Of a stretch of 64,000 bases of DNA, positions 33,299 to 52,583 are shown piece after piece. The notes below the pieces were generated by a model. That model saw only the letters and a program-made list of their open reading frames with translations. It was not told where the DNA came from and did not search any database. Both the position numbers and the translations under genes were made by a program. Source of the DNA: Asterias rubens (lineage: Eukaryota); NCBI RefSeq assembly GCF_902459465.1, contig NC_047080.1:744001-808000 (forward strand). Direction: 5' to 3'. The stretch's first letter is position 1. Each line of letters opens with the position of its first letter.

Positions 33299-37531
<4,233 letters not shown>

Positions 37532-41561: not shown

Positions 41562-44500
41562 ATGGCTCAGCAGATGTCCGACCCAAGTGAGTTGTTCCCA
41601 TTGCTAGAATCCAACGATCTTCATGTCATCCAAGAAATCAAGGCGCTGATACAAGACAATCTTAACTCAGGTGGGTAACGACAAGACAAAAAATGTGGTT
41701 TACCTGATTTCACCCCCGAGTTTGTACTTTTGACCCTGAACTGAAGTAATTTACTCCCTTGTACAGTCTGAGCATTTAATATCACCAATTGTGGTTTCTA
41801 GTTATTGAACCATACTCAAGATGAATGAAGTAGTGAATGGTCAGACAGTAGGAGCGGTTGACTATGGGCTGTGTACATACATTCAATATATGAGGGCATA
41901 GTTTATGAACACCACAGTTGATACCGTTGAGTGGTCAGACAGTAGGAGCGGTTGACTATGTTATTGGTGATGCATTCATTACATGATTGCAGGCTAACAT
42001 AGTCTATCATTTACTACCAATGAATGAATGTGGAAGATAATATAGACCTTTATCACGGTGTGGCTATCTTGATTTTACTCCATTCCAATTTATTGTAACC
42101 AAACTAAGGCCGGACGGAATAATAGTCTGGTGCCACGTTTGCACAATGCATGTTAACATTCATTACTGTAATTGGAAGCAGGGAACATGACCAAGATGGT
42201 GACAGCATGATAAAGGTCTATTGAATGGTAAGACGATAAGACTCAAGAGGGAAGATTTTAGAATAATTGTGTGTGTAAACTTTGCTTTGTGATTTACAGC
42301 ACGTGATCCTGGGTTTCTCAATGCGTTGGTGGATTTCTACATACTCACAAACTCCCAGAATGCACTGGACCTTCTTGCTGGTGTCAGGGAACCCTTAGAC
42401 AAGGTATGCCTTGTGGCATTTGTGAATTTTATACATTTTTTTCCGAACAGGAGTAAATTTTTGTAATTTGCAACAGAATCTGAGAAGAAAAACCCCGAAT
42501 AAGAAAGTTAGCTCAACAAAAGTATGCTTACCAGAATAAGTTTACCAGTCAGACTGTAATGTCACATGTACATTTTGTGACTGGTATCCTGCTCATTACT
42601 GCTTAGCATAGAATTCTTTACACTAATGTCTTCCTAAAAAAGTAGCTCTTTGAAACTGGGCCTTGGTATACCACACCATGTTTGGTTCAAAACTGACCAG
42701 CAAGATGACTAACTCAATGAAACCCTGAGTGCATCCAAGAATGCAGCCAGCAAGGGTGAGAGCGCAAGGTCCATCTTCAAGCAGTTCCAGTCCCTAATTG
42801 TGCGAGGAAAGAACGAGAGGGTGAGAGGGCAAGGTCCATCTTCAAGCAGATCTAGTTCCTAATTGTGCGAGGAAAGAACAAGAGGGTGAGAGGGCAGGGT
42901 CCATCTTCAAGCAGATCTAGTTCCTAATTGTGCGAGGAAAGAACGAGAGGGTGAGAGGGCAGGGTCCATCTTCAAGCAGATCTAGTTCCTAATTGTGCGA
43001 GGAAAGAACGAGAGGGTGAGAGGGCAGGGTCCATCTTCAAGCAGATCCAGTTCCTAATTGTGCGAGGAAAGAACGAGAGGGTGAGAGGGCAGGGTCCATC
43101 TTCAAGCAGATCTAGTTCCTAATTGTGCGAGGAAAGAACGAGAGGGTGAGAGGGCAGGGTCCATCTTCAAGCAGTTCCAGTCCCTAATTGTGCGAGGAAA
43201 GAACGATGAAACATAGACCTGATTGCAGCAGTGTGGGATGTAGAAGCGGGATCCATGTCCTCTAGTCAGGTTGCCAGTTGTCTAGCCCTTGCCAGTTTAT
43301 GTCCACAAGGTCATAGCGAATACGATACATCATTTCAAAATGAGACCAAAAACTAGATGGCTGTACATTAATATAAATATTATGACATTTCTTGACAGCC
43401 ATTGATGGACAGAATGAATGACAACATGAAGGCGGGCCACAAATTGCAGAGTTTGACCTTACTGAGTCATGTGGTGAGACGGCAGCCATCTTGGCTTCAT
43501 AAGATCGTCCAAGCTCCTCTATTTATGTCTCTGCTGAATTGCTTAAAGGTAATAGTCCATTCTAACTTGTTAGGTTTTGTTAGCTTCGTCTCGTTTGTGT
43601 CCTTGGGGTCCAATCTGTTACAAAAAGTGTCAATTGTACATAATTTAACAGGTTTTTTTGCTGAGTTATTTGTAAAGTGCCTAGAGATAAATTGACAATA
43701 GGCGCTATGCAAATCAAATTTATTATTATTATTATTATTACTAACATAGTTGTGCTAGCAATGATGTCTTTTGGTTTCTTACCTAGATGGATATCGATGT
43801 TCCAGTGATTATGTGTGGCTTGCTGTCGATAACCACCTTGCTACCCATGATACCCAGCCTGGTTGGTCCTTCTCTGCCGGAAATTTTTCGGGTATTCTCC
43901 CACCTTGCCTCATGGAATGTTAGAAAACCGGGTAGGTCAAGAATTGACCCTAAGTATTATACTTCAACTCTCCTACTGTGTGATAATCGTCCGAAAGGTT
44001 ACAATGTTTCTGCGCCTTGAACACCCAGCAGGGTGGATATGTGCGCATTACAAGTCTTATTATTATTATTATTATTAATGAAAGATGCAACACTGCAATC
44101 AGGGCCTGATTTCACAAGTGTCAAATCCTACTTATATTGCTGGTTATTCATTAAGGACTTTTTTTCTCAACAGGTGGTATCCCTGATGTTTACCAGCTCC
44201 ATTTACAGGTAGCGGTGTATGCACTCTTCCATCGACTCTACGGCATGTACCCATTGAACTTCCTCCAGTACCTCAGATCTTATTATCAGAATAAGAATGA
44301 GGAATTCAAGAAAGCTGTCTTGGTAAGTGAAACAGGGGTTGGCACCAAAGTTTCAATCACACTTCCCTAGTAGGTGCTGCGCTGCTGTGGTGGTTCTCAT
44401 AAAAATACCTTCTTATAAAAATCTGTCAACTTGGTAGATATGTATGCTATAGAACACTCCAGTATTAAATCAAGTCATAACTTTATTTTGTTGGTCATGT

Positions 44501-47500
44501 TTTTATCTGTAGCCGATGATGGAGCGTGTTCGTATGCATCCTCTGCTAGTTATCGGCACAGCTAGATCCGAAACGGAAAATGCAAGGTGGGTTTAAATCA
44601 AATTGAATGCCCTGACTGCCCTGACCAACCTGGTTGACTGATCAAACCAGACCTGACTGAACTGACCTGACCTTTCCTGACCTGACCTGACCTGACCTGA
44701 CCTGGCCTGACCTGACCGACCTGACCGACCTGACCGACCTGGCTGGCTGACCTGACCAATCTGACAATCTGATTGATCTTATTGACTTGACTAACCTGAC
44801 TAGCATAACTGACCTGACTGAGGTTATGGTTTATGATCAAGCAGGTAATCTTAAAATTAAACAATATCTGTTAGAAGAAGATTGGGTTGTTTATGCTTTA
44901 TACTTGTGTTCTTTTCTTGAAGATGGAGGAAGATGGAGGTACATGATGTACTGATGGAGTGTGCTCGTGTTTCATTGGATACAACAGAATCTGCTCGAGA
45001 CGATTCCTTCAACTATGTCCCGATACCTGTTGGTTTTGACACTGAGAGGAGAGGGTCAAAGGGCATAGCGGCTGGGATCATGGGTCAAGGCATGAAAACT
45101 TCTTCCCCCATTGTTGATGGTCATGGTAAGAGTATGGAGGTTTATTGTCAACATTTCCAAGCCAGTTGCCTTCCCATTTGAAACAGCATGGTGGCACTAC
45201 TCGGTACAAGTGAATGTGTGTACTGTATAGATGAACATAACAATTAGATTTTACAAAATTGAAGTGTGATATGACAGTAGATGGGAAGGATATCTAGGGT
45301 TCATTTCAGTCAAGCATTTATAAACAATAAGAGCAAGTTTTAAATGAATCCATTCTCTCATTGAAGCTAGACTGGATGATATTGAATGGTCATATAGTAG
45401 GAGGGTTAAGACACTTGTAATCTGATGTTGCTGTCAACTCATTTGAAAATCGCTTTTCTTAACAAGGTACTGAGCTGTCTCACAAGCCATTGATACAGTG
45501 GGATAGTGACTCTAAGAAAACAGACCCCGATACGCACAGCCTGGTTTCGTCACAAGAGGGGGGTATTATATCGATGTTCAGCCCGTCCATGGTGTGCGGA
45601 CTGAGCACACCACCTTCCTCCCATCCTCCCTCCCCATTGGGCAGTCAACTGGATGTCAGTCTGACATCATCAGTCCAGATGCATTATACGACCCCTCTCC
45701 AAGAGACACCGACGCCTCAGTCAACACCGCACGATTCCCCTCATCCCAACGCAGCTCTCCATCTCAGCAGTCGTATGTCCAGCATGAGCGAGGGCAGTGT
45801 TCACAGCCGTGCCGGAAAGGGATCTGGCGGGAGAGCCGGACGTGGGAAGCTCCCGCCAATCACAACTCACTCTGCAATGTCGTTGTCTCGGACCGTCTCT
45901 GCACCAGTGACGCCAGGCTATGAGTCCAAATCCTTGCCGTGCACCCCTCAGAAACCTCTCATGGGTGGCAAGGCATACTCTCAAGAGATCACCAAGCAGA
46001 GGAGATTTGTGTGGGATGATGCAGAGGCTCTTGCGACTAACGGCACAGCATCGTTTTCAACCAAAGAGCCTCCTCAAGCTGCTCCTGTTACTGAAGAAAG
46101 TGAGGCAAGGAAAGAAAGGACGGAGAGCTCTGTCTCCTTGAGAGACCTTCCCGAAGTCATTAAGGATCTTTCTCATGAGGAGCAGAGACCACGTGATGGT
46201 AAGTAAACAAGAGAATGCTTGGTAGGATTTGAAACTTTGCACTGTGGGCCTACAATCAAGTGACACATGTACATTTAAATGTCTTTTTGAGTTATGTTTT
46301 TCGGTCAGAACCACCACAACTCGTGTAATGTTTTGCATTTGTTTGTTATTTGTAAACTTCCAGATGATGCAATGAATGAAGAGGTGTCGTCTTTCATTGG
46401 TAGTCCTTACACTCCACAGGATCTGGAAACTTCTGTAAACTCATGTATTACAACTACCCAAACCAAAACAACAACTTCAGACCGACTCCCTCTGAAGACG
46501 GACCTGACTACGCCTTCCATGACAATGTCATCAGCGTATTTGATGAAAGTTCACTCTAAGGATGTTGAAACAACTCCTCGAGCGAATGGAACAAGTCGCC
46601 AAGAGACAGTCAGAACGCAAAGTGATCCGAGTGCAGCACACCGTAGTACGTTGATAAAATCATCCGAGAGTGAAACCCGTTTAAGAACCAGTAGTTTCGG
46701 TAACAAGGCGACGAAGAACATCTCAGCGGATCTCTTCGGCGTCCGGAAAGGAAAGGATGCCAGCGTTGAGCATACCATAACACCACAAGGGTTTGTCCCG
46801 ATTATTGATCAATCAATGGATAGTTTGGAGTCACCGATAACTCGATACGGGACACAAAGTACCACATCAGATACTTTCAGCACCCCTGGGCCGTCCTACA
46901 ACCAACAAGCACCACCACAAATGCCTTACATGCATCTCTTCAATCTGATCGTTCCGACGTTGCAGAATTTATCCCCCGCTGGGACCTCATCGAGAGATCA
47001 CTCCCCGGTTGTCTCAAGCGCGAACAGCACGGGTAGTGGGTTGTATTCTACCCCGCCACCTATGTCTAGAGTTGACTCGCTGCCAGTAGGGAGTACACCT
47101 ATAGACAGTATCGGTAAAGTTCCGCTACATTCGTTGTATTCACCAAGTCAGCTTCTGGATCGTCATCTACAGATGGGGAATATGACTCATGAGGATCAAC
47201 TTACTGGGTAAGAACCTTCAAAGGTCATTCCACATGCCAGGACCCTGGGCTGGATTTCACAAAGAGTTAAGGCTAGTCTTATCTCAAGTTAGGACCAGTT
47301 ACTCGTCCTGACTTGGGACTAGCCATACGTTTTTAACATCTCTCCTTGGACTAGTCCTAAGTTAGGACCAGTCCTAACTCTTTGTGAAATCGACCCCACA
47401 CTGTTTTCAAGCCAAGTAGCTCCTCACTCAAATTTTGAATGTGCGCACTTAAGGTTCAAACTTCCATGAGCCAAATATTTGAACTTATAACTTAAATTTA

Positions 47501-50500
47501 GGCGGGAAATTTGAACGCTTCTTGCAATCAACTAAAAGCGCCCTCTTTAACTCAGTGTGAAAGTGTCCCAAGTAGTTATGCATGTCGGACAATACAAGGT
47601 TTTTACGGGGTTTGCTTTCTCATGTTTATTTCCAAATATCACAATATATATATATAATGTTAAACCATACAAGCATTAGGTACAATGGGTGATAAGTGGA
47701 GTGCTTTGGAAATATTAACTTATTTTATCGATGAACAACAATTTTTCAATTAAACCTTCCTTCCTTGCAGGAAATACTGATTGTTACAGCGCCAGGAGTG
47801 TCACTGAGTGACGGACATGGGCGCTATATAAGAAGCCACAATTATTATTATTATTATTATTTGCAGATTGTCTCTCGTCAGCCAAGGGGCAGTGGATTGG
47901 ACTCATTTTGGAGGATCTCCACCAGCGGATGAAATCAAACTACTGAAGGGCCAGCTGCAGTTACTTCACAATCAGCTTCTGTATGAGAGACACAAGAGGG
48001 AGGTTCATGCAGAGAGGAATAGGCGCCTCCTTGGCAAGACACATAAGGTACAGTCCCATCTCCTTGTACCGATATCGCTGGGACTGGTAAAATTACCTCT
48101 TTATAACAGGCATCTGATATTATCTCCCAAGGTATTGGAAGTTGACATTCGTCTCAGGAACTGTTTTGTCAACTTCAAGTACCTTAGTCTAGATGATAAT
48201 AGCAGATTCAGGAAGGTCTGTAGCTAAAGACTTTCCAGTTGGAATAAACCTTATGCACATAATGTCATTTGAATAGGGTGCTTCGGCTAGAGGTCAAAAG
48301 AAGGTTGCTCATTGGCCCATCATGTGCGCCAAGCGTGCACAGATTTTCATTGCATGTTTTTTTAAATTGTTGCATCATGATTATAAGATGGCGGCGTGAT
48401 GATGTCAATGCCATTATACACACGGGGACATTGGTTGTATTGTTCAGGGACATTGATCAAGTGTTGTTCATTGCAGGCCAAAGCTCTTGAAGAATCCAAT
48501 GCAGCAATGTTGGAGCAACGCCAACTCCTAGAAGTAGAAGTGAATCAAGTCAGAGCGGCCTTCAAGTTACTCCGAGAAGAGAATAAACAACTTAGTGAAG
48601 CTAATGGCACCAAGGACCAGACGCATAATGCATTAATGAAGTAAGAATACTCATCAGCTATGTTTTAATGCTGCTAAGCATGGGAAGAACCTGCTAAGTA
48701 GTTTCGGGTTACCAGTTTAGTATCATGAATTTTTTTATATCGTTAATAACTGGTGCTCCACTACAGTTTTCGTTCAAGTTGTTTTCTTGCTTTCGATACG
48801 CATGAGACTTGCATTGTTGATTATGGAATTTTTTGGGCTAAAAAAAAGAAGAAATGTTTGTAACTATAACTTTTATAAGTATTTGTATGAAAACATATTT
48901 GTATGTTGTTGGTGTTTCTCTTATTACCTACAACTTTTATTTTCAGGAAATTGCAAGGTGAGAATGAGCACATGAGAGATGCAAATGAGGAACTTCAAAA
49001 GCTTCTGGTTCATCACAAACAGGAAGTCGATAAAGAAGCAAAGGTAAACAAGAATGCTTCAACTTTGAACTCTAACCTCGATATATGAAGGTTATTAGCA
49101 CTAGACTCAAGCTCTGATGTTTCTGATCAGCAGAGTGTGGGTTTGAGTCCCGGTCTTGACACTTAAACATTATTTCTTTGTCATTCAGATGGGATGCAAA
49201 GCTGTAGGTTCCGTACACATGTGTTGTTTAATGCACGTAACAGAACCAAGTAACACTTATCCCCAAGCCTCTGTGTTTCTGGCATTGTCTGCTGAATGCA
49301 CTCAGCATCCTTTTAATTTTTTGTTTTTTTAAGCCTGTCTAAAAATGTTTTTTTTGGTCAAAATTCAACCCGTGAGTATCTCTTAGCTAGATCTGTGCCC
49401 TATATAAGATTGTAGTGTTTTACAGTATGTATTTGAGAATTTGAATTTGAATTTGGATTTTTTCAGGAGTTACAGGCGGCTAATGCTAAATTGTTCACAG
49501 TGCAACAGGAATTGGACAACGCTAGGGCGGATGTAGCAACCAACAGACACCTAAAAGATGAGGTACCTGACCTATGACATTTGCCTAGCAACTCTTGCAT
49601 CAAGACGTCCATAGGTCCTTTATAAAACCACAGCTTGGTCTTTATTGGGCTTGTGCTTGGCCTTTGTCATTCAACCTCGTCACACGAGACAACTTTTACT
49701 GGCAACAGTGCATTCTACGGGACCACTCATTCTCTGTACAGTCACACCCAATTCAGAAAACAAAAATAAAAAATAACAACTTTGGAAGCCAATTAATAAT
49801 TTGTCAAACAGTTTCTTACGATCCCAAAGAAAAATATGTGTACATTAAAATATGAATGTATTTTCTTCTTAGAGATTGCCTGGAACTGGTTGCCTGTAAA
49901 TGGCCCTGTGTGACATGGGCCTTTAGGCTTTGTCTGTTATTTAGAAGATTTGCGCTTTCCTTACAGGGTTTCAATCAAGCATTGGGTAAAGGCAGTGGAC
50001 ACTATTGGTAATTACTCAACATAAATACTAGCATAAAACCTTACTTGGTAACAAGTAATGGGGAGCTGTTGATAGTATAAAACATTGTGAGAAATGGCTC
50101 CCTCTGAAGTATTGTAGTTTTCGAGAAAGAAGTAATTTTCTATGAATTTAATTTCGAGACCTCAGAATTTGATTTTGAGGTCACGAAATCAAGCATCTGA
50201 AAGCACACAACTTTGGTGACAAGGGTGGTTTTTCTTTCATTATTATCTCACATTTTTGACGGCCAATTGAGCTCAAGTTTTCACAGGTTTGTTATATAAT
50301 GCATAATGTTGAGATACACTAAGTGAGAAGACTGGTCTTGGACAATTACCAATAGTGTCCGGTGTCTTTAAATAAAGTAATCGGTGGAGTTCAAGACATA
50401 ATGCCGTTCTTTTCTCCTCACTTACTCCCCAGATTGCTCGACTGAACAGGGAGCTATTACTGATGGGTGAGACAAACACAAAGTATCAAGAGAAGGTGGA

Positions 50501-52583
50501 GGAAGCGCGAAGGAATGATCATAAGACAGAAGAGACTGAGATGAGATGGACCACACTGAAAAAAGACCTCGCTGGTAAATGAGAAATTAAGAAAGAAATC
50601 GTTGAAAGAAAGAATCAACCCCAACAAGTTTGTCTTAAGTTTGAAAACTTTGCATGGTAGAAAGGTTTGTGGTAACACCATTGTCCAGAAAAGGCTAAAT
50701 GTTTCTCAATTTATTTGGCAACTATTTTGGCAACTATTTTCATGATACCAGAGCATGATATTTTTTTTAATGTTGTGCCAATTTCTTTTTTAGAAAAGGC
50801 CAAACATTTCTCAGTGTGTATGTGGCAACATTTTTGATGATTCAGTTTGTATTTATCAGGCGTTTTGTGTACTTTTTTGTTTGACATTTTTCAGTTTCTC
50901 AAGAGTCGTTAAAAAGAAAGAATGTTCAGACGGAAGCTGCCAAAGCTCGAATTGGAGAAATGGAGGCATCACTTACACTAAAGGTTTGTAGACACTTGTC
51001 TTATTTATTGATCTTGATAGTTTGGATGATTTATTGGGATTATTTCTCCTTAATTAATCCTTGACTGTGTGACAACTGTTTGAAAGCTCATATGTTTGTC
51101 AACCAATATTATATTTGGGGCTTTACATTTTTTTTTTCTTCATCTTTCAGGACGTTGCAATGGCTGAGCAGAAACGTTTTTTGGAAAACGTAAAAAGCCT
51201 CAACAAGGGTAAAATGGAGGTAGGAGTGACACTTTTGTTTGACCTTGAGGGTCAAATGTTATTTTGATAAACACATAGATTTGATTGGAGCTTTGAGCTG
51301 AGGGAATAACCTCATCTAATAAGCATCTTATTGTTGCATTCGAACCGCCTTTAGGCCCGGAGTTTCATCTTTGAGACGGCTAAGCTATTTTCGTTTGGCA
51401 AAAGGCACTTTCATTGGAAAATCTCAAAGTCTTAGTCTTTTGATGAGACATGAAGGCCAAGACCAAGGGCAACAAAGGCCTGTGCAACTCCAGGCCAGCT
51501 CCTTGACTATACATGTTTTGAAGAGTTAATAGACTTGTCTTTCAAAAAAGAGATCTTGAAGAAAAAAATAATGTTGGATTGATTTTGGATTTTTTTGTTT
51601 TGCAGTCGATGGATGCCAAGTACAACGCCCTCAAGAAAATCAACCAATGTCTTGAGGCTCACATCCTGAAACTCACCAAGAGCTTGAGGGAGAGAGAGAA
51701 GGAGACTGGTCACTTCAAAAGACGTCATCATCTTGTGTCGCCCCAAGGCATCTCCCGTCGTCATTCTGGTCCATCGAGCGGCGCTGCTGATCAGAAGATG
51801 GAGAGAATGGAGAGTTCAGATTCAGGAGGAACATCTTCATCTGGAATGTATTCAATCCAAACCTCATCTCCAAGAACTCTTGACCGGAGTCAGTCTCAGG
51901 ACGAAACGTACCCAGTGAGACCAGTAGATGTGGACGCTCATCTCGTCGTTAAAACTGAAAGCGACTTCTCACAGACGTCTCTGTCTGTGAAGGGATCAAA
52001 GGATGATCATCTCACCCCTAGTCATCTATCCGGGTCCCATTCAACCCCTCGCTCTAGCCCCATGAGTGAGTGGGAGAATCTAAGTGGAGAGGTTGATTTG
52101 AACAAACCTACTAAAAAAGAACCTGCAGAAGCTATCCTTGTCCCTAAACCAACAGAGAGGGCAGGTTTTGAGCGGCACGATTCAGGTAGCCGTCTTCACA
52201 TCAACAGTCCGCCTTTAGTATTCAGCGATACGTCCCCCTTCCAGCGAGTCCAGCAGAGCCCTCGCTTGTCCACAAGGCACAGCTCTTTCTCCCCCTCCAG
52301 CAAGATCTCTTTAAACCCCCCGGTTGAAATCGGCAGGAGAGCTGCCAGCCAATCCTGCCCGGATCTCGACTCGTCGGGCAGCCAGTTTACGAACTTGACT
52401 CAGTCGCAAGTCGAGGGAGGGGAAGAGGACATACAGGAGGAGGAGGCATCTGAGGGAACCTCGGCTTCACCTCCAGGGGCTGTTGTGGACAGTGTAGAAC
52501 CAAGAGTGTTCCATCACGGCTTAGCGTCTATACTACACATGGAAGCCAGTATTGAAGAAGCAGACTTAAGCAAATATAAATAG
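41562..52583 (+). CDS. TSC1: Hamartin (tuberous sclerosis 1 protein), 1441 aa
   Basis: 17 coding exons: 41562-41670, 42300-42403, 43399-43548, 43787-43931, 44174-44322, 44513-44586, 44923-45125, 45467-46198, 46364-47207, 47867-48047, 48477-48640, 48947-49043, 49467-49562, 50433-50574, 50895-50983, 51151-51219 and 51606-52583; 4326 nt in frame, GT-AG throughout. Hallmark motifs MAQQ.., [43 protein letters not shown] and [10 protein letters not shown], followed by the coiled coil. Confidence 0.95.
42753..43206. repeat. 65-bp tandem repeat x 7 in TSC1 coding intron 2
   Basis: Unit AGGGTGAGAGGGCAGGGTCCATCTTCAAGCAGATCTAGTTCCTAATTGTGCGAGGAAAGAACGAG, starting at 42753, 42818, 42883, 42948, 43013, 43078 and 43143. 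Confidence 0.95.
43567..43740 (+). mobile_element. 5'-truncated LINE/SINE 3' tail with (ATT)n
   Basis: GTAAAGTGCCTA..TAGGCGCTAT stem followed by about 7 ATT units. Possible TSD CTAAC; the left boundary is uncertain. Confidence 0.55.
44000..44077 (+). mobile_element. 5'-truncated LINE/SINE 3' tail with (ATT)n
   Basis: TGCGCC..GTGCGCA stem, then TTACAAGTC(TTA)n. Confidence 0.5.
44610..44822. repeat. (CTGAC)n-type degenerate microsatellite in TSC1 intron 6
   Basis: Runs of CTGAC/CTGACC/CTGACCGAC. Explains ORF 44598-44864. Confidence 0.9.
47247..47396. mobile_element. Palindromic MITE 40 bp downstream of the TSC1 exon 9 donor
   Basis: TIRs GGGCTGGATTTCACAAAGAGTTA / TAACTCTTTGTGAAATCGACCC. Confidence 0.75.
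47771..47860 (+). mobile_element. 90-bp 5'-truncated retroelement tail inserted in the TSC1 exon 10 acceptor, with TSD TTGCAG
   Basis: AGCGCC..GGCGCT stem, then ATATAAGAAG and (ATT)n. Flanked by TTGCAG at 47765-47770 and 47861-47866. Confidence 0.7.
49090..49170 (+). mobile_element. tRNA-derived SINE head (same family as 34620-34947)
   Basis: GACTCAAGCTCTGATGTTTCTGATCAGCAGAGTGTGGGTTTGAGTCCCGGTCTTGACACTT. Confidence 0.7.
49990..50367 (+). mobile_element. Kolobok/T2-type MITE, subfamily A
   Basis: AGGCAGTGGACACTATTGGTAATT ... AATTACCAATAGTGTCCGGTGTCT followed by TTAA. Confidence 0.85.

What the first reader, a model, noticed from the sequence alone, without database searches (positions are those of the whole stretch)
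47751..47870. Retroelement tail inserted exactly into a TSC1 3' splice site: the TSD duplicated the acceptor and left a poison alternative
The sequence reads CCTTCCTTCC-TTGCAG-[90-bp LINE-type stem-loop plus (ATT)n]-TTGCAG-exon 10. The upstream copy (AG at 47769-47770) keeps the pyrimidine-rich tract. The downstream copy (AG at 47865-47866), which is needed for full-length hamartin, has only the (ATT)n tail as its tract. Use of the upstream AG adds 96 nt in frame but reads GGG AAA TAC TGA (stop at 47778-47780). That would truncate hamartin before the conserved VDWTHFGG/coiled-coil region and predict NMD. A TE insertion may thus have created a tunable unproductive-splicing switch, or a hypomorphic allele, in a core mTOR regulator.
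Basis: partly seen in the sequence, partly recalled or inferred. Interest (0 to 1): 0.75.

Follow-up and report, generated by a model that had tools for sequence, protein, structure and literature searches.

The report
Old SINE tail at TSC1 acceptor
The last ~100 bases of a common starfish SINE landed millions of years ago exactly at the splice acceptor of a TSC1 (hamartin) exon; the gene still splices normally at the downstream acceptor, and nothing yet shows that the upstream "poison" acceptor is used.

Summary
The sequence is as described. TTGCAG (47765-70) is followed by a 96-nt retroelement tail ending in (ATT)7, then TTGCAG (47861-66), then TSC1 exon 10 (47867-48047). Splicing at the upstream AG would read GG|G AAA TAC TGA.

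The element is the 5'-truncated tail of a ~415-430-bp SINE with a tRNA-like head, not a LINE. The genome holds at least 1750 candidate copies. The upstream CTTGCAG is also SINE sequence, so target duplication and microhomology cannot be told apart.

The insertion is not a variant allele. The same insertion, with the same junctions, is in Asterias amurensis. Acanthaster, Patiria and Lytechinus have a plain T-rich tract and AG at the same exon start.

Spliced contigs from three RNA-like runs, and the RefSeq proteins of both Asterias species, join 47207 to 47867. The downstream AG is therefore the constitutive acceptor. Its branch point and tract must lie in the SINE tail, and by this gene's own standard the tail is not a weak tract.

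Use of the upstream AG was not seen, but contigs cannot exclude a rare isoform cleared by NMD. The regulated switch is unsupported. This is an ordinary kind of event, comparable to the canine merle SINE, in a notable gene.

The parts
46364..47207 (+). TSC1 (hamartin) exon 9. It ends ...CTT ACT GG|gtaagaac, in phase 2.
   Evidence: A spliced model of 17 exons reproduces the RefSeq A. rubens hamartin-like protein P0123 exactly. RNA-like contigs end this block at 47207.
47239..47400 (.). Unrelated MITE-like element of very high copy number, with inverted ends, inside intron 9.
   Evidence: Summed contig depth is 10^4-10^5 in all four runs. The A. amurensis copy has a 29-nt internal gap.
47701..47763 (+). 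Ancestral 3' splice region of intron 9. It has a 67-nt AG-free zone, a TTAAC branch-like motif near 47716-20 and the CCTTCCTTCC tract.
   Evidence: Sequence. AG-free zone and pyrimidine figures. There is 1 substitution and 1 indel against A. amurensis.
47764..47770 (+). CTTGCAG, the proximal (decoy) acceptor. It is at once the first bases of SINE homology and, as TTGCAG, the upstream arm of the 6-bp direct repeat (target duplication or microhomology).
   Evidence: Nearly all of the other 29 copies read ..ATCTTGCAGGAAATACTG... BLAST of full-length copies against the window starts at 47764.
47771..47840 (+). Non-repetitive part of the 5'-truncated SINE tail. It holds in-frame stops at 47778-80 and in GTCACTGAG, the GCGCC...GGCGC hairpin (47789-47824) and five further AGs.
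   Evidence: It has 6 substitutions in 70 nt against A. amurensis.
47841..47861 (+). (ATT)7 microsatellite tail of the SINE. It now serves as the T-rich tract, and probably the branch-site region, of the acceptor in use.
   Evidence: Tandem repeat finder. The last AG before the acceptor is at 47834-35, which leaves a 29-nt AG-free zone. Tails of other copies run from 5 to 79 units.
47861..47866 (+). TTGCAG, the distal acceptor and the one used constitutively. It is the downstream arm of the direct repeat and abuts the ancestral exon start.
   Evidence: RNA-like contigs in X10, X13 and X4 join 47207 to 47870 with 3 letters between. The region 47830-69 was masked as a repeat, so this equals 47207>47867. 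Supported by the RefSeq models and by outgroup exon starts.
47867..48047 (+). TSC1 exon 10 (G)[16 protein letters not shown]...GKTHK, the start of the conserved coiled-coil region.
   Evidence: Contigs join it onward to exon 11 at about 48477.

Best explanation
In the Asterias lineage, a reverse-transcribed copy of an abundant SINE integrated at the TTGCAG acceptor of TSC1 intron 9. The SINE is ~415-430 bp long, with a tRNA-like head and an (ATT)n tail. Only its last ~100 nt were copied.

The 5' end joined where the SINE's own internal CTTGCAG could pair with the target. As a result, the 6-bp flanking repeat is both a target-site duplication and a microhomology.

The insertion left two acceptors 96 nt apart:
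- The upstream one combines the ancestral branch region and CT-rich tract with a SINE- or duplication-derived AG.
- The downstream one is the ancestral AG next to the exon, now preceded by the SINE tail.

The downstream AG is the constitutive acceptor. Five other AGs lie between the two sites, and the last is 29 nt upstream of the acceptor. The branch point and U-rich tract in use must therefore lie in the SINE tail (CCACAA + (ATT)7). In this T-rich-acceptor genome that is an ordinary-to-good tract. This probably explains why the insertion was tolerated at birth and became fixed.

The upstream site is a decoy. Its product would carry a stop after three codons and would be expected to be degraded. 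It is at most a minor isoform.

What is shown: the insertion, its family, its age bracket and dominant use of the distal AG. What is inferred: the microhomology mechanism, the branch point inside the SINE, and near-neutrality at birth.
For: Family and truncation:
- At least 1750 candidate copies in the genome.
- Full-length copies of 413-446 bp share the head GTGGCCGAGCGGT...GGTTCGAATCC.
- Homology in the window starts at 47764.

Age:
- The same insertion, the same junctions and the same 96-nt spacing are in A. amurensis locus L031.
- The window's exons reproduce the A. rubens RefSeq protein exactly.
- The two species are dated to ~28 Mya apart in PMC11090083.
- DNA run X1 has a contig identical over 47672-47801.

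Ancestral state:
- Acanthaster (...gattttgcttctttcag|TTTGCCC), Patiria (...ttatttttcttttcag|TTTGCCC) and Lytechinus (...ggttttttttacacag|GTTACCC) have a plain tract and AG at the same codon.

Usage:
- One contig in each of X10, X13 and X4 covers 46600-47207, then 3 letters, then 47870-48045, then 48475-48641.
- The RefSeq proteins of both Asterias species read ...HEDQLTG|LSLVSQ.

Tract quality:
- Distal T fraction is 0.65 against a mean of 0.56 for the other acceptors.
- The crude PWM gives 12.2 bits for the distal site, 6.7 for the proximal one, and a mean of 6.5 (sd 4.3) for the 15 others.

Literature:
- The AG-exclusion-zone logic comes from PMC1431707.
- Annealing of an internal cDNA sequence to the 5' target, and microhomology-mediated end joining, are described in PMC2912911.
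Against: - The RNA evidence is assembled contigs, which drop rare variants. The junction itself fell in a masked repeat, so it is read from a 3-letter gap and not from a listed joint.
- The upstream site looks fully competent: a 67-nt AG-free zone, a 12-nt pyrimidine run and CAG|G. Strict first-AG scanning from the old branch point would favour it, so some use is plausible and could be hidden by NMD.
- The PWM rests on only 15 sites.
- No branch point was mapped.
- The tRNA-like head is not recognised by ARAGORN and only weakly by Rfam (tRNA clan, E = 0.58).
- The partner LINE was not identified.
- The outgroup introns are too diverged to align, so they are not a true empty site.
Confidence: 0.78

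Rival explanations
1. Regulated unproductive splicing. The upstream acceptor is used at a meaningful and variable level. It yields a PTC-containing mRNA that NMD removes, so the SINE insertion gave Asterias a tunable brake on hamartin dosage. The (ATT)n length might act as a modulator.
For: - The upstream site keeps a complete ancestral 3' splice region, and the stop comes 3 codons in.
- Both the AG and an in-frame stop are present in A. amurensis too. The first stop there lies further in, at CAC TGA.
- NMD would hide the isoform from contigs.
- Tail-length-dependent acceptor choice has a precedent in the canine merle SINE (PMC7349775).
Against: - No contig or gene model shows the 47207>47771 junction.
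- The SINE interior diverges faster than the rest of the intron (8.6% against 3.5%).
- At this divergence, retention of the AG is expected by chance.
- The tail has the same total length in both species.
Confidence: 0.12
2. Hypomorphic or segregating insertion allele. A recent insertion in the sequenced individual weakens the TSC1 acceptor.
For: The insertion disrupts the spacing between the old branch region or tract and the exon.
Against: - It is present at the orthologous site in A. amurensis with species-specific substitutions.
- It is present in DNA run X1.
- The copy differs from the family majority at about 4 of 77 positions, which is typical of the family and not young.
- Normal spliced mRNA is seen in three runs.
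Confidence: 0.02
3. The distal AG is reached from the ancestral branch point upstream of 47764. The SINE hairpin would shorten the effective distance or hide the intervening AGs, so the SINE supplies spacer and structure and not the branch or tract.
For: - A GCGCC...GGCGC stem with an inner GTCAC/GTGAC stem encloses three of the intervening AGs.
- Structure-assisted 3' splice site choice is known in yeast (PMC3239191, listed).
Against: - The fold is not significant (z = -1.5).
- The outer stem is broken in A. amurensis (GGCGC becomes GGCCC).
- The proximal AG, the ACAG at 47785-88 and the AAGAAG at 47830-35 lie outside the hairpin and would still be met first.
Confidence: 0.06

Closest known systems
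Canine merle: SINE insertion at the intron 10/exon 11 boundary of PMEL (PMC7349775)
   Same: A SINE landed exactly at a 3' splice site. The flanking target duplication contains the original acceptor. The element brings a second (cryptic) acceptor, and its simple-repeat tail lies next to the acceptor as the tract.
   Different: - Merle is antisense, with a poly(T) tract. Here the SINE is in sense orientation with an (ATT)n tail.
- Merle is a full-length, recent, segregating allele whose tail length visibly shifts splicing. This one is a ~100-nt fragment, fixed in at least two species, with normal splicing as the only isoform seen.
- Here the decoy acceptor lies upstream and uses the host's old tract.
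tRNA-derived SINEs with a short-repeat 3' tail, mobilised by a partner LINE that recognises the 3' end (general knowledge of non-LTR retrotransposons)
   Same: - Length of about 415-430 bp.
- Head with A-box-like and B-box-like motifs.
- No ORF.
- A 3' stem-loop followed by a microsatellite tail.
- Thousands of dispersed copies, many of them 5'-truncated.
- Short flanking repeats.
   Different: - The partner LINE was not found.
- The head scores below the tRNA detection thresholds.
- The family was not matched to a named SINE family or core domain.
Microhomology-mediated 5' end attachment of truncated L1/Alu insertions (PMC2912911; Zingler et al. 2005, cited there)
   Same: The truncation point coincides with 6-7 nt shared between the element and the target, so the duplication and the element overlap.
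   Different: This was shown for human L1-driven insertions. Here it is inferred from one junction, for an unidentified echinoderm LINE machinery.
Alternative 3' splice sites coupled to NMD (poison exons, unproductive splicing)
   Same: Use of the upstream AG would add 96 nt with an early in-frame stop, more than 270 nt before the next exon junction.
   Different: No use of the site, no regulation and no conservation beyond the neutral level were observed.

Membership tests
SINE (non-autonomous non-LTR retrotransposon) | Many dispersed copies of a short non-coding unit | tested here: met
   1750 candidates in the genome, with the best 40 at 92-96% identity. The shared unit is 413-446 bp, or up to 513 bp with a long tail.
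SINE (non-autonomous non-LTR retrotransposon) | Pol III-type head derived from a tRNA (A and B boxes) | tested here: inconclusive
   The head reads GTGGCCGAGCGGTTAAGAGCAC...GGGTTCGAATCCCC in ten full-length copies. ARAGORN finds no tRNA. Rfam gives only a weak tRNA-clan match (21 bits, E = 0.58).
SINE (non-autonomous non-LTR retrotransposon) | Simple-repeat 3' tail and short target-site duplications | tested here: met
   (ATT)5-79 tails in all 30 copies. Flanking repeats of 5-7 bp are visible in some full-length copies (L004, L008, L018) and unclear in others.
Retroposed insertion at the TSC1 acceptor | Homology begins inside the element, ends in the tail, and is flanked by a direct repeat | tested here: met
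   Homology runs from 47764 to the tail. TTGCAG lies at 47765-70 and at 47861-66.
Retroposed insertion at the TSC1 acceptor | Orthologous site without the insert | tested here: inconclusive
   Acanthaster, Patiria and Lytechinus have a tract and AG directly at the same exon start and no SINE. Their introns are not alignable. The only close relative available, A. amurensis, has the insert.
Unproductive-splicing (AS-NMD) switch | The alternative site introduces a premature stop | tested here: met
   GG|G AAA TAC TGA, with the stop at 47778-80.
Unproductive-splicing (AS-NMD) switch | The alternative junction is present in RNA | tested here: not met
   Contigs of X10, X13 and X4 show only the canonical junction, and no 47207>47771 joint is listed. 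Contigs cannot exclude a rare isoform.
Unproductive-splicing (AS-NMD) switch | Conservation of the alternative region above the neutral level | tested here: not met
   The SINE tail diverges 6.8% (interior 8.6%) against 3.5% for the unique part of the intron.
Unproductive-splicing (AS-NMD) switch | Isoform stabilised when NMD is blocked; use varies with condition | not testable with these tools
   This needs raw junction counts and an experiment.
Merle-type tail-length-dependent splicing | Tail length varies among individuals and shifts acceptor choice | not tested
   Only two genomes were compared. The tail has the same total length in both, with one interrupted unit in A. amurensis.

The most novel reading that the evidence does not exclude
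The upstream decoy acceptor is used in a substantial, condition-dependent fraction of TSC1 pre-mRNAs, and NMD hides the product. A SINE fragment would then have given Asterias a heritable dosage control on an mTOR brake, with (ATT)n length as a possible modulator. Starfish regenerate arms and grow plastically with food supply, which is where such a control might matter.
Probability: 0.1. Interest if true: 0.6.

Novelty: new member of a known kind. Interest (0 to 1): 0.3.

Why it matters
This is a clean natural example of a retroelement fragment replacing the whole branch-point and tract region of a constitutive acceptor in an essential growth regulator, and surviving for millions of years.

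It shows that an (ATT)n SINE tail can serve as a working 3' splice region in an echinoderm. It also leaves a fully formed ancestral acceptor 96 nt upstream as a built-in competition experiment.

As a splicing curiosity it is useful for testing rules of 3' splice site choice outside vertebrates. As a regulatory mechanism it is unproven. It does not change what is known about TSC1 or about retroelement effects on splicing.

Tried and rejected
- **Upstream junction in RNA.** It returned only assembled contigs, with the junction region 47830-69 masked as a repeat. No 47207>47771 joint was listed, but 14 joints were not shown and rare variants are dropped. This is no proof of absence.
- **tRNA detection in the SINE head.** ARAGORN found nothing. 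Rfam gave only a sub-threshold tRNA-clan hit, and the other Rfam hits in that locus are chance.
- **Hairpin as a significant structure.** Rejected: -21.5 kcal/mol, z = -1.5, and 18 of 200 shuffles fold as well.
- **Other forcipulatid orthologues, to date the insertion more tightly.** The protein searches returned only Asterias, Patiria and Acanthaster among sea stars. The brittle-star protein had no contig on record.
- **Logan-derived protein fragments ending ...LTGKY.** Not pursued. No Logan-derived Asterias hamartin of 788 aa or more appeared, so the collection seems not to hold those transcripts.
- **Partner LINE.** Not identified. The SINE copies swamp any search with the tail.
- **Earlier notes of the scan, searched by words.** Nothing found.
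- **Conservation as an argument for function.** Rejected. At 3.5% neutral divergence, retention of a dinucleotide is expected by chance.

Full report
**1. The observation**

The window reads ...aaaCCTTCCTTCC-TTGCAG(47765-70)-GAAATACTGATTGTTACAGCGCCAGGAGTGTCACTGAGTGACGGACATGGGCGCTATATAAGAAGCCACA-(ATT)7-TTGCAG(47861-66)-ATTGTCTCTCGTC.... The ATT array at 47841-61 is confirmed by Tandem Repeats Finder.

The downstream sequence encodes [24 protein letters not shown]..., the conserved hamartin motif. Exon 9 ends at 47207 with two bases of a codon. The downstream AG therefore gives GG|A TTG TCT (G L S). The upstream AG gives GG|G AAA TAC TGA, with the stop at 47778-80.

**2. The gene and the organism**

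A protein search with exon 9 found sea-star hamartins. A spliced model of 17 exons in the window (41562-52583) reproduces the RefSeq Asterias rubens hamartin-like protein (P0123, 1441 aa) residue for residue. Exon 10 is 47867-48047.

The window is therefore A. rubens or something indistinguishable from it, and "exon 10" is the right number.

**3. What the insert is**

The 90 bases 47771-47860 have at least 1750 candidate matches in the same 418-Mb genome. The best 40 are 92-96% identical.

Aligning the flanks of 29 other copies shows a shared unit of about 415-430 bp. Its parts are:
- a head, GTGGCCGAGCGGTTAAGAGCAC...GGGTTCGAATCCCC, which looks like the A and B boxes of a tRNA gene;
- a non-coding body;
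- the stem-loop region seen in the window;
- an (ATT)n tail of 5 to 79 units.

This is a SINE, not a LINE. ARAGORN does not call the head a tRNA and Rfam gives only a weak tRNA-clan match. The tRNA origin is therefore probable but not proven. The partner LINE was not found.

The hairpin in the tail is not more stable than shuffled sequence.

**4. The 5' junction**

Nearly all of the other 29 copies read ...CCCACATCTTGCAGGAAATACTG.... BLAST of full-length copies against the window begins at 47764. The upstream CTTGCAG is therefore SINE sequence as much as it is a copy of the target.

The most economical account combines three points:
- The target TTGCAG was duplicated.
- Reverse transcription ended where the cDNA could pair with that overhang at the SINE's own TTGCAG.
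- This kind of 5' attachment, at an internal cDNA sequence or by microhomology-mediated end joining, is described for L1-driven insertions (PMC2912911).

Under a duplication reading or a no-duplication reading, the reconstructed empty site is the same: CCTTCCTTCC-TTGCAG|ATTG.

**5. Age and fixation**

The A. amurensis gene (L031) has the same fragment with the same two junctions and the same 96 nt between the two AGs. It carries its own substitutions. For example, it keeps the family's GTATG and GAGCG where the window has GATTG and GAGTG.

A DNA run under another organism label has a contig identical over 47672-47801, which spans the 5' junction.

The insertion therefore predates the A. rubens / A. 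amurensis split, dated to about 28 Mya in PMC11090083. The copy differs from the family majority at about 4 of 77 positions, which is typical of the family.

In Acanthaster, Patiria and the sea urchin Lytechinus, the homologous exon starts at the same codon. It is preceded directly by an ordinary T-rich tract and AG, with no SINE. These introns are too diverged to align, so they bracket the event without providing a true empty site.

**6. Which acceptor is used**

Three RNA-like runs from three studies and two organism labels were laid on the region. In each, one contig covers 46600-47207, then 47870-48045, then 48475-48641, with exactly three record letters between the first two blocks.

The tool masked 47830-47869 as a repeat. 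The three letters are therefore 47867-69, and the junction is 47207>47867. The upstream acceptor would have left 99 letters.

The RefSeq proteins of both Asterias species read HEDQLTG|LSLVSQ. No 47207>47771 joint was listed. However, contigs drop rare variants and not all joints were shown, so a minor, NMD-depleted isoform is not excluded.

**7. How it most likely works**

Five further AGs lie between the two acceptors. The last is at 47834-35, which leaves a 29-nt AG-free zone before the acceptor in use. By the AG-exclusion-zone logic (PMC1431707), the branch point for the distal AG should lie in or just upstream of that zone. That places it in CCACAA/(ATT)n, inside the SINE. This is inferred, not mapped.

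The (ATT)n tract is not weak by local standards:

| Measure | Distal site (47867) | Proximal site (47771) | Other 15 TSC1 acceptors |
|---|---|---|---|
| T fraction, -23 to -4 | 0.65 | 0.40 | mean 0.56 |
| Pyrimidine fraction, -23 to -4 | 0.65 | 0.70 | mean 0.70, minimum 0.55 |
| Crude PWM score (bits) | 12.2 | 6.7 | mean 6.5, sd 4.3 |

The PWM rests on only 15 sites and is descriptive.

The SINE tail plus the duplicated TTGCAG thus rebuilt a serviceable 3' splice region at once. This would explain why an insertion into the acceptor of an essential gene was tolerated and became fixed.

**8. The poison-switch idea**

The upstream site is intact and looks competent: a 67-nt AG-free zone, a 12-nt pyrimidine run and CAG|G. 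Some use is therefore plausible. Its product would end after three extra codons, before the coiled coil, with the stop more than 270 nt before the next junction.

Nothing observed supports use or regulation. Sequence comparison adds nothing, because the unique part of the intron differs by only 3.5% between the two species and the SINE interior by 8.6%. I put the regulated-switch reading at about 0.1 and the hypomorphic-allele reading at about 0.02.

**9. Comparison with known cases**

The nearest described case is the canine merle allele (PMC7349775). In merle:
- a SINE sits at the PMEL intron 10/exon 11 boundary;
- the target duplication contains the original acceptor;
- the element supplies a cryptic acceptor;
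- the tail acts as the tract, and its length decides which acceptor is used.

The present case differs in four ways:
- it is in sense orientation with an (ATT)n tail;
- it is a fragment, not a full element;
- it is old and fixed;
- it shows normal splicing only.

It is a new member of a known kind.

**10. Verdict**

The insertion reading is supported, with corrections: the element is a SINE, the junction shows microhomology, and the insertion is ancient and fixed. The poison-switch and hypomorph readings are not supported.

Interest is modest. It is a neat natural experiment in 3' splice site choice in a non-model deuterostome, and it is testable with raw junction counts and NMD inhibition.

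Noticed in passing
window 47239-47400: A MITE-like element with inverted ends (GG..CTGGATTTCACAAAGAGTTAAGGC ... CCTAACTCTTTGTGAAATCGACCCC) lies in TSC1 intron 9. Its summed contig depth is 10^4-10^5 in every run laid, so it is one of the most abundant repeats of this genome. The A. amurensis copy has a 29-nt internal gap.
   Followed up: partly
L033 5636-5792 (Acanthaster); L032 just downstream of 8416 (Patiria): In the two valvatid sea stars, the equivalent of exon 10 is split by an extra intron right after ...DWTHFGG. The upstream piece is a 49-nt micro-exon in Acanthaster, and Patiria's looks the same. Asterias and the sea urchin Lytechinus (L034 21129-21308) have one continuous exon. This suggests intron gain in Valvatida, or parallel loss.
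   Followed up: partly
window 34831-34947 (-), 37199-37297 (-), 49107-49164 (+): Three more stretches match the tRNA-like head of the SINE at 79-86% identity, without the tail. They are probably other SINE families that share the head, or old copies.
   Followed up: no
L010, downstream of its (ATT)11 tail: This SINE copy is followed by TTGCAGGATACT, which resembles the SINE's own internal TTGCAGGAAATACT. It may be a second truncated copy inserted tail-to-body, or another microhomology junction.
   Followed up: no
window 47878-48019: DNA run X1 shows zero depth over most of exon 10, although both flanks are covered. The tool warns that conserved genes lose contigs to its filter, so this is most likely an artefact and not a deletion.
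   Followed up: no
loci L018, L023, L025, L030: (ATT)n tails of this SINE family range up to 36 and 79 units. In some copies they have changed into GTT/ATT, CTG or GTCACT arrays. The tails are active microsatellite seeds.
   Followed up: no
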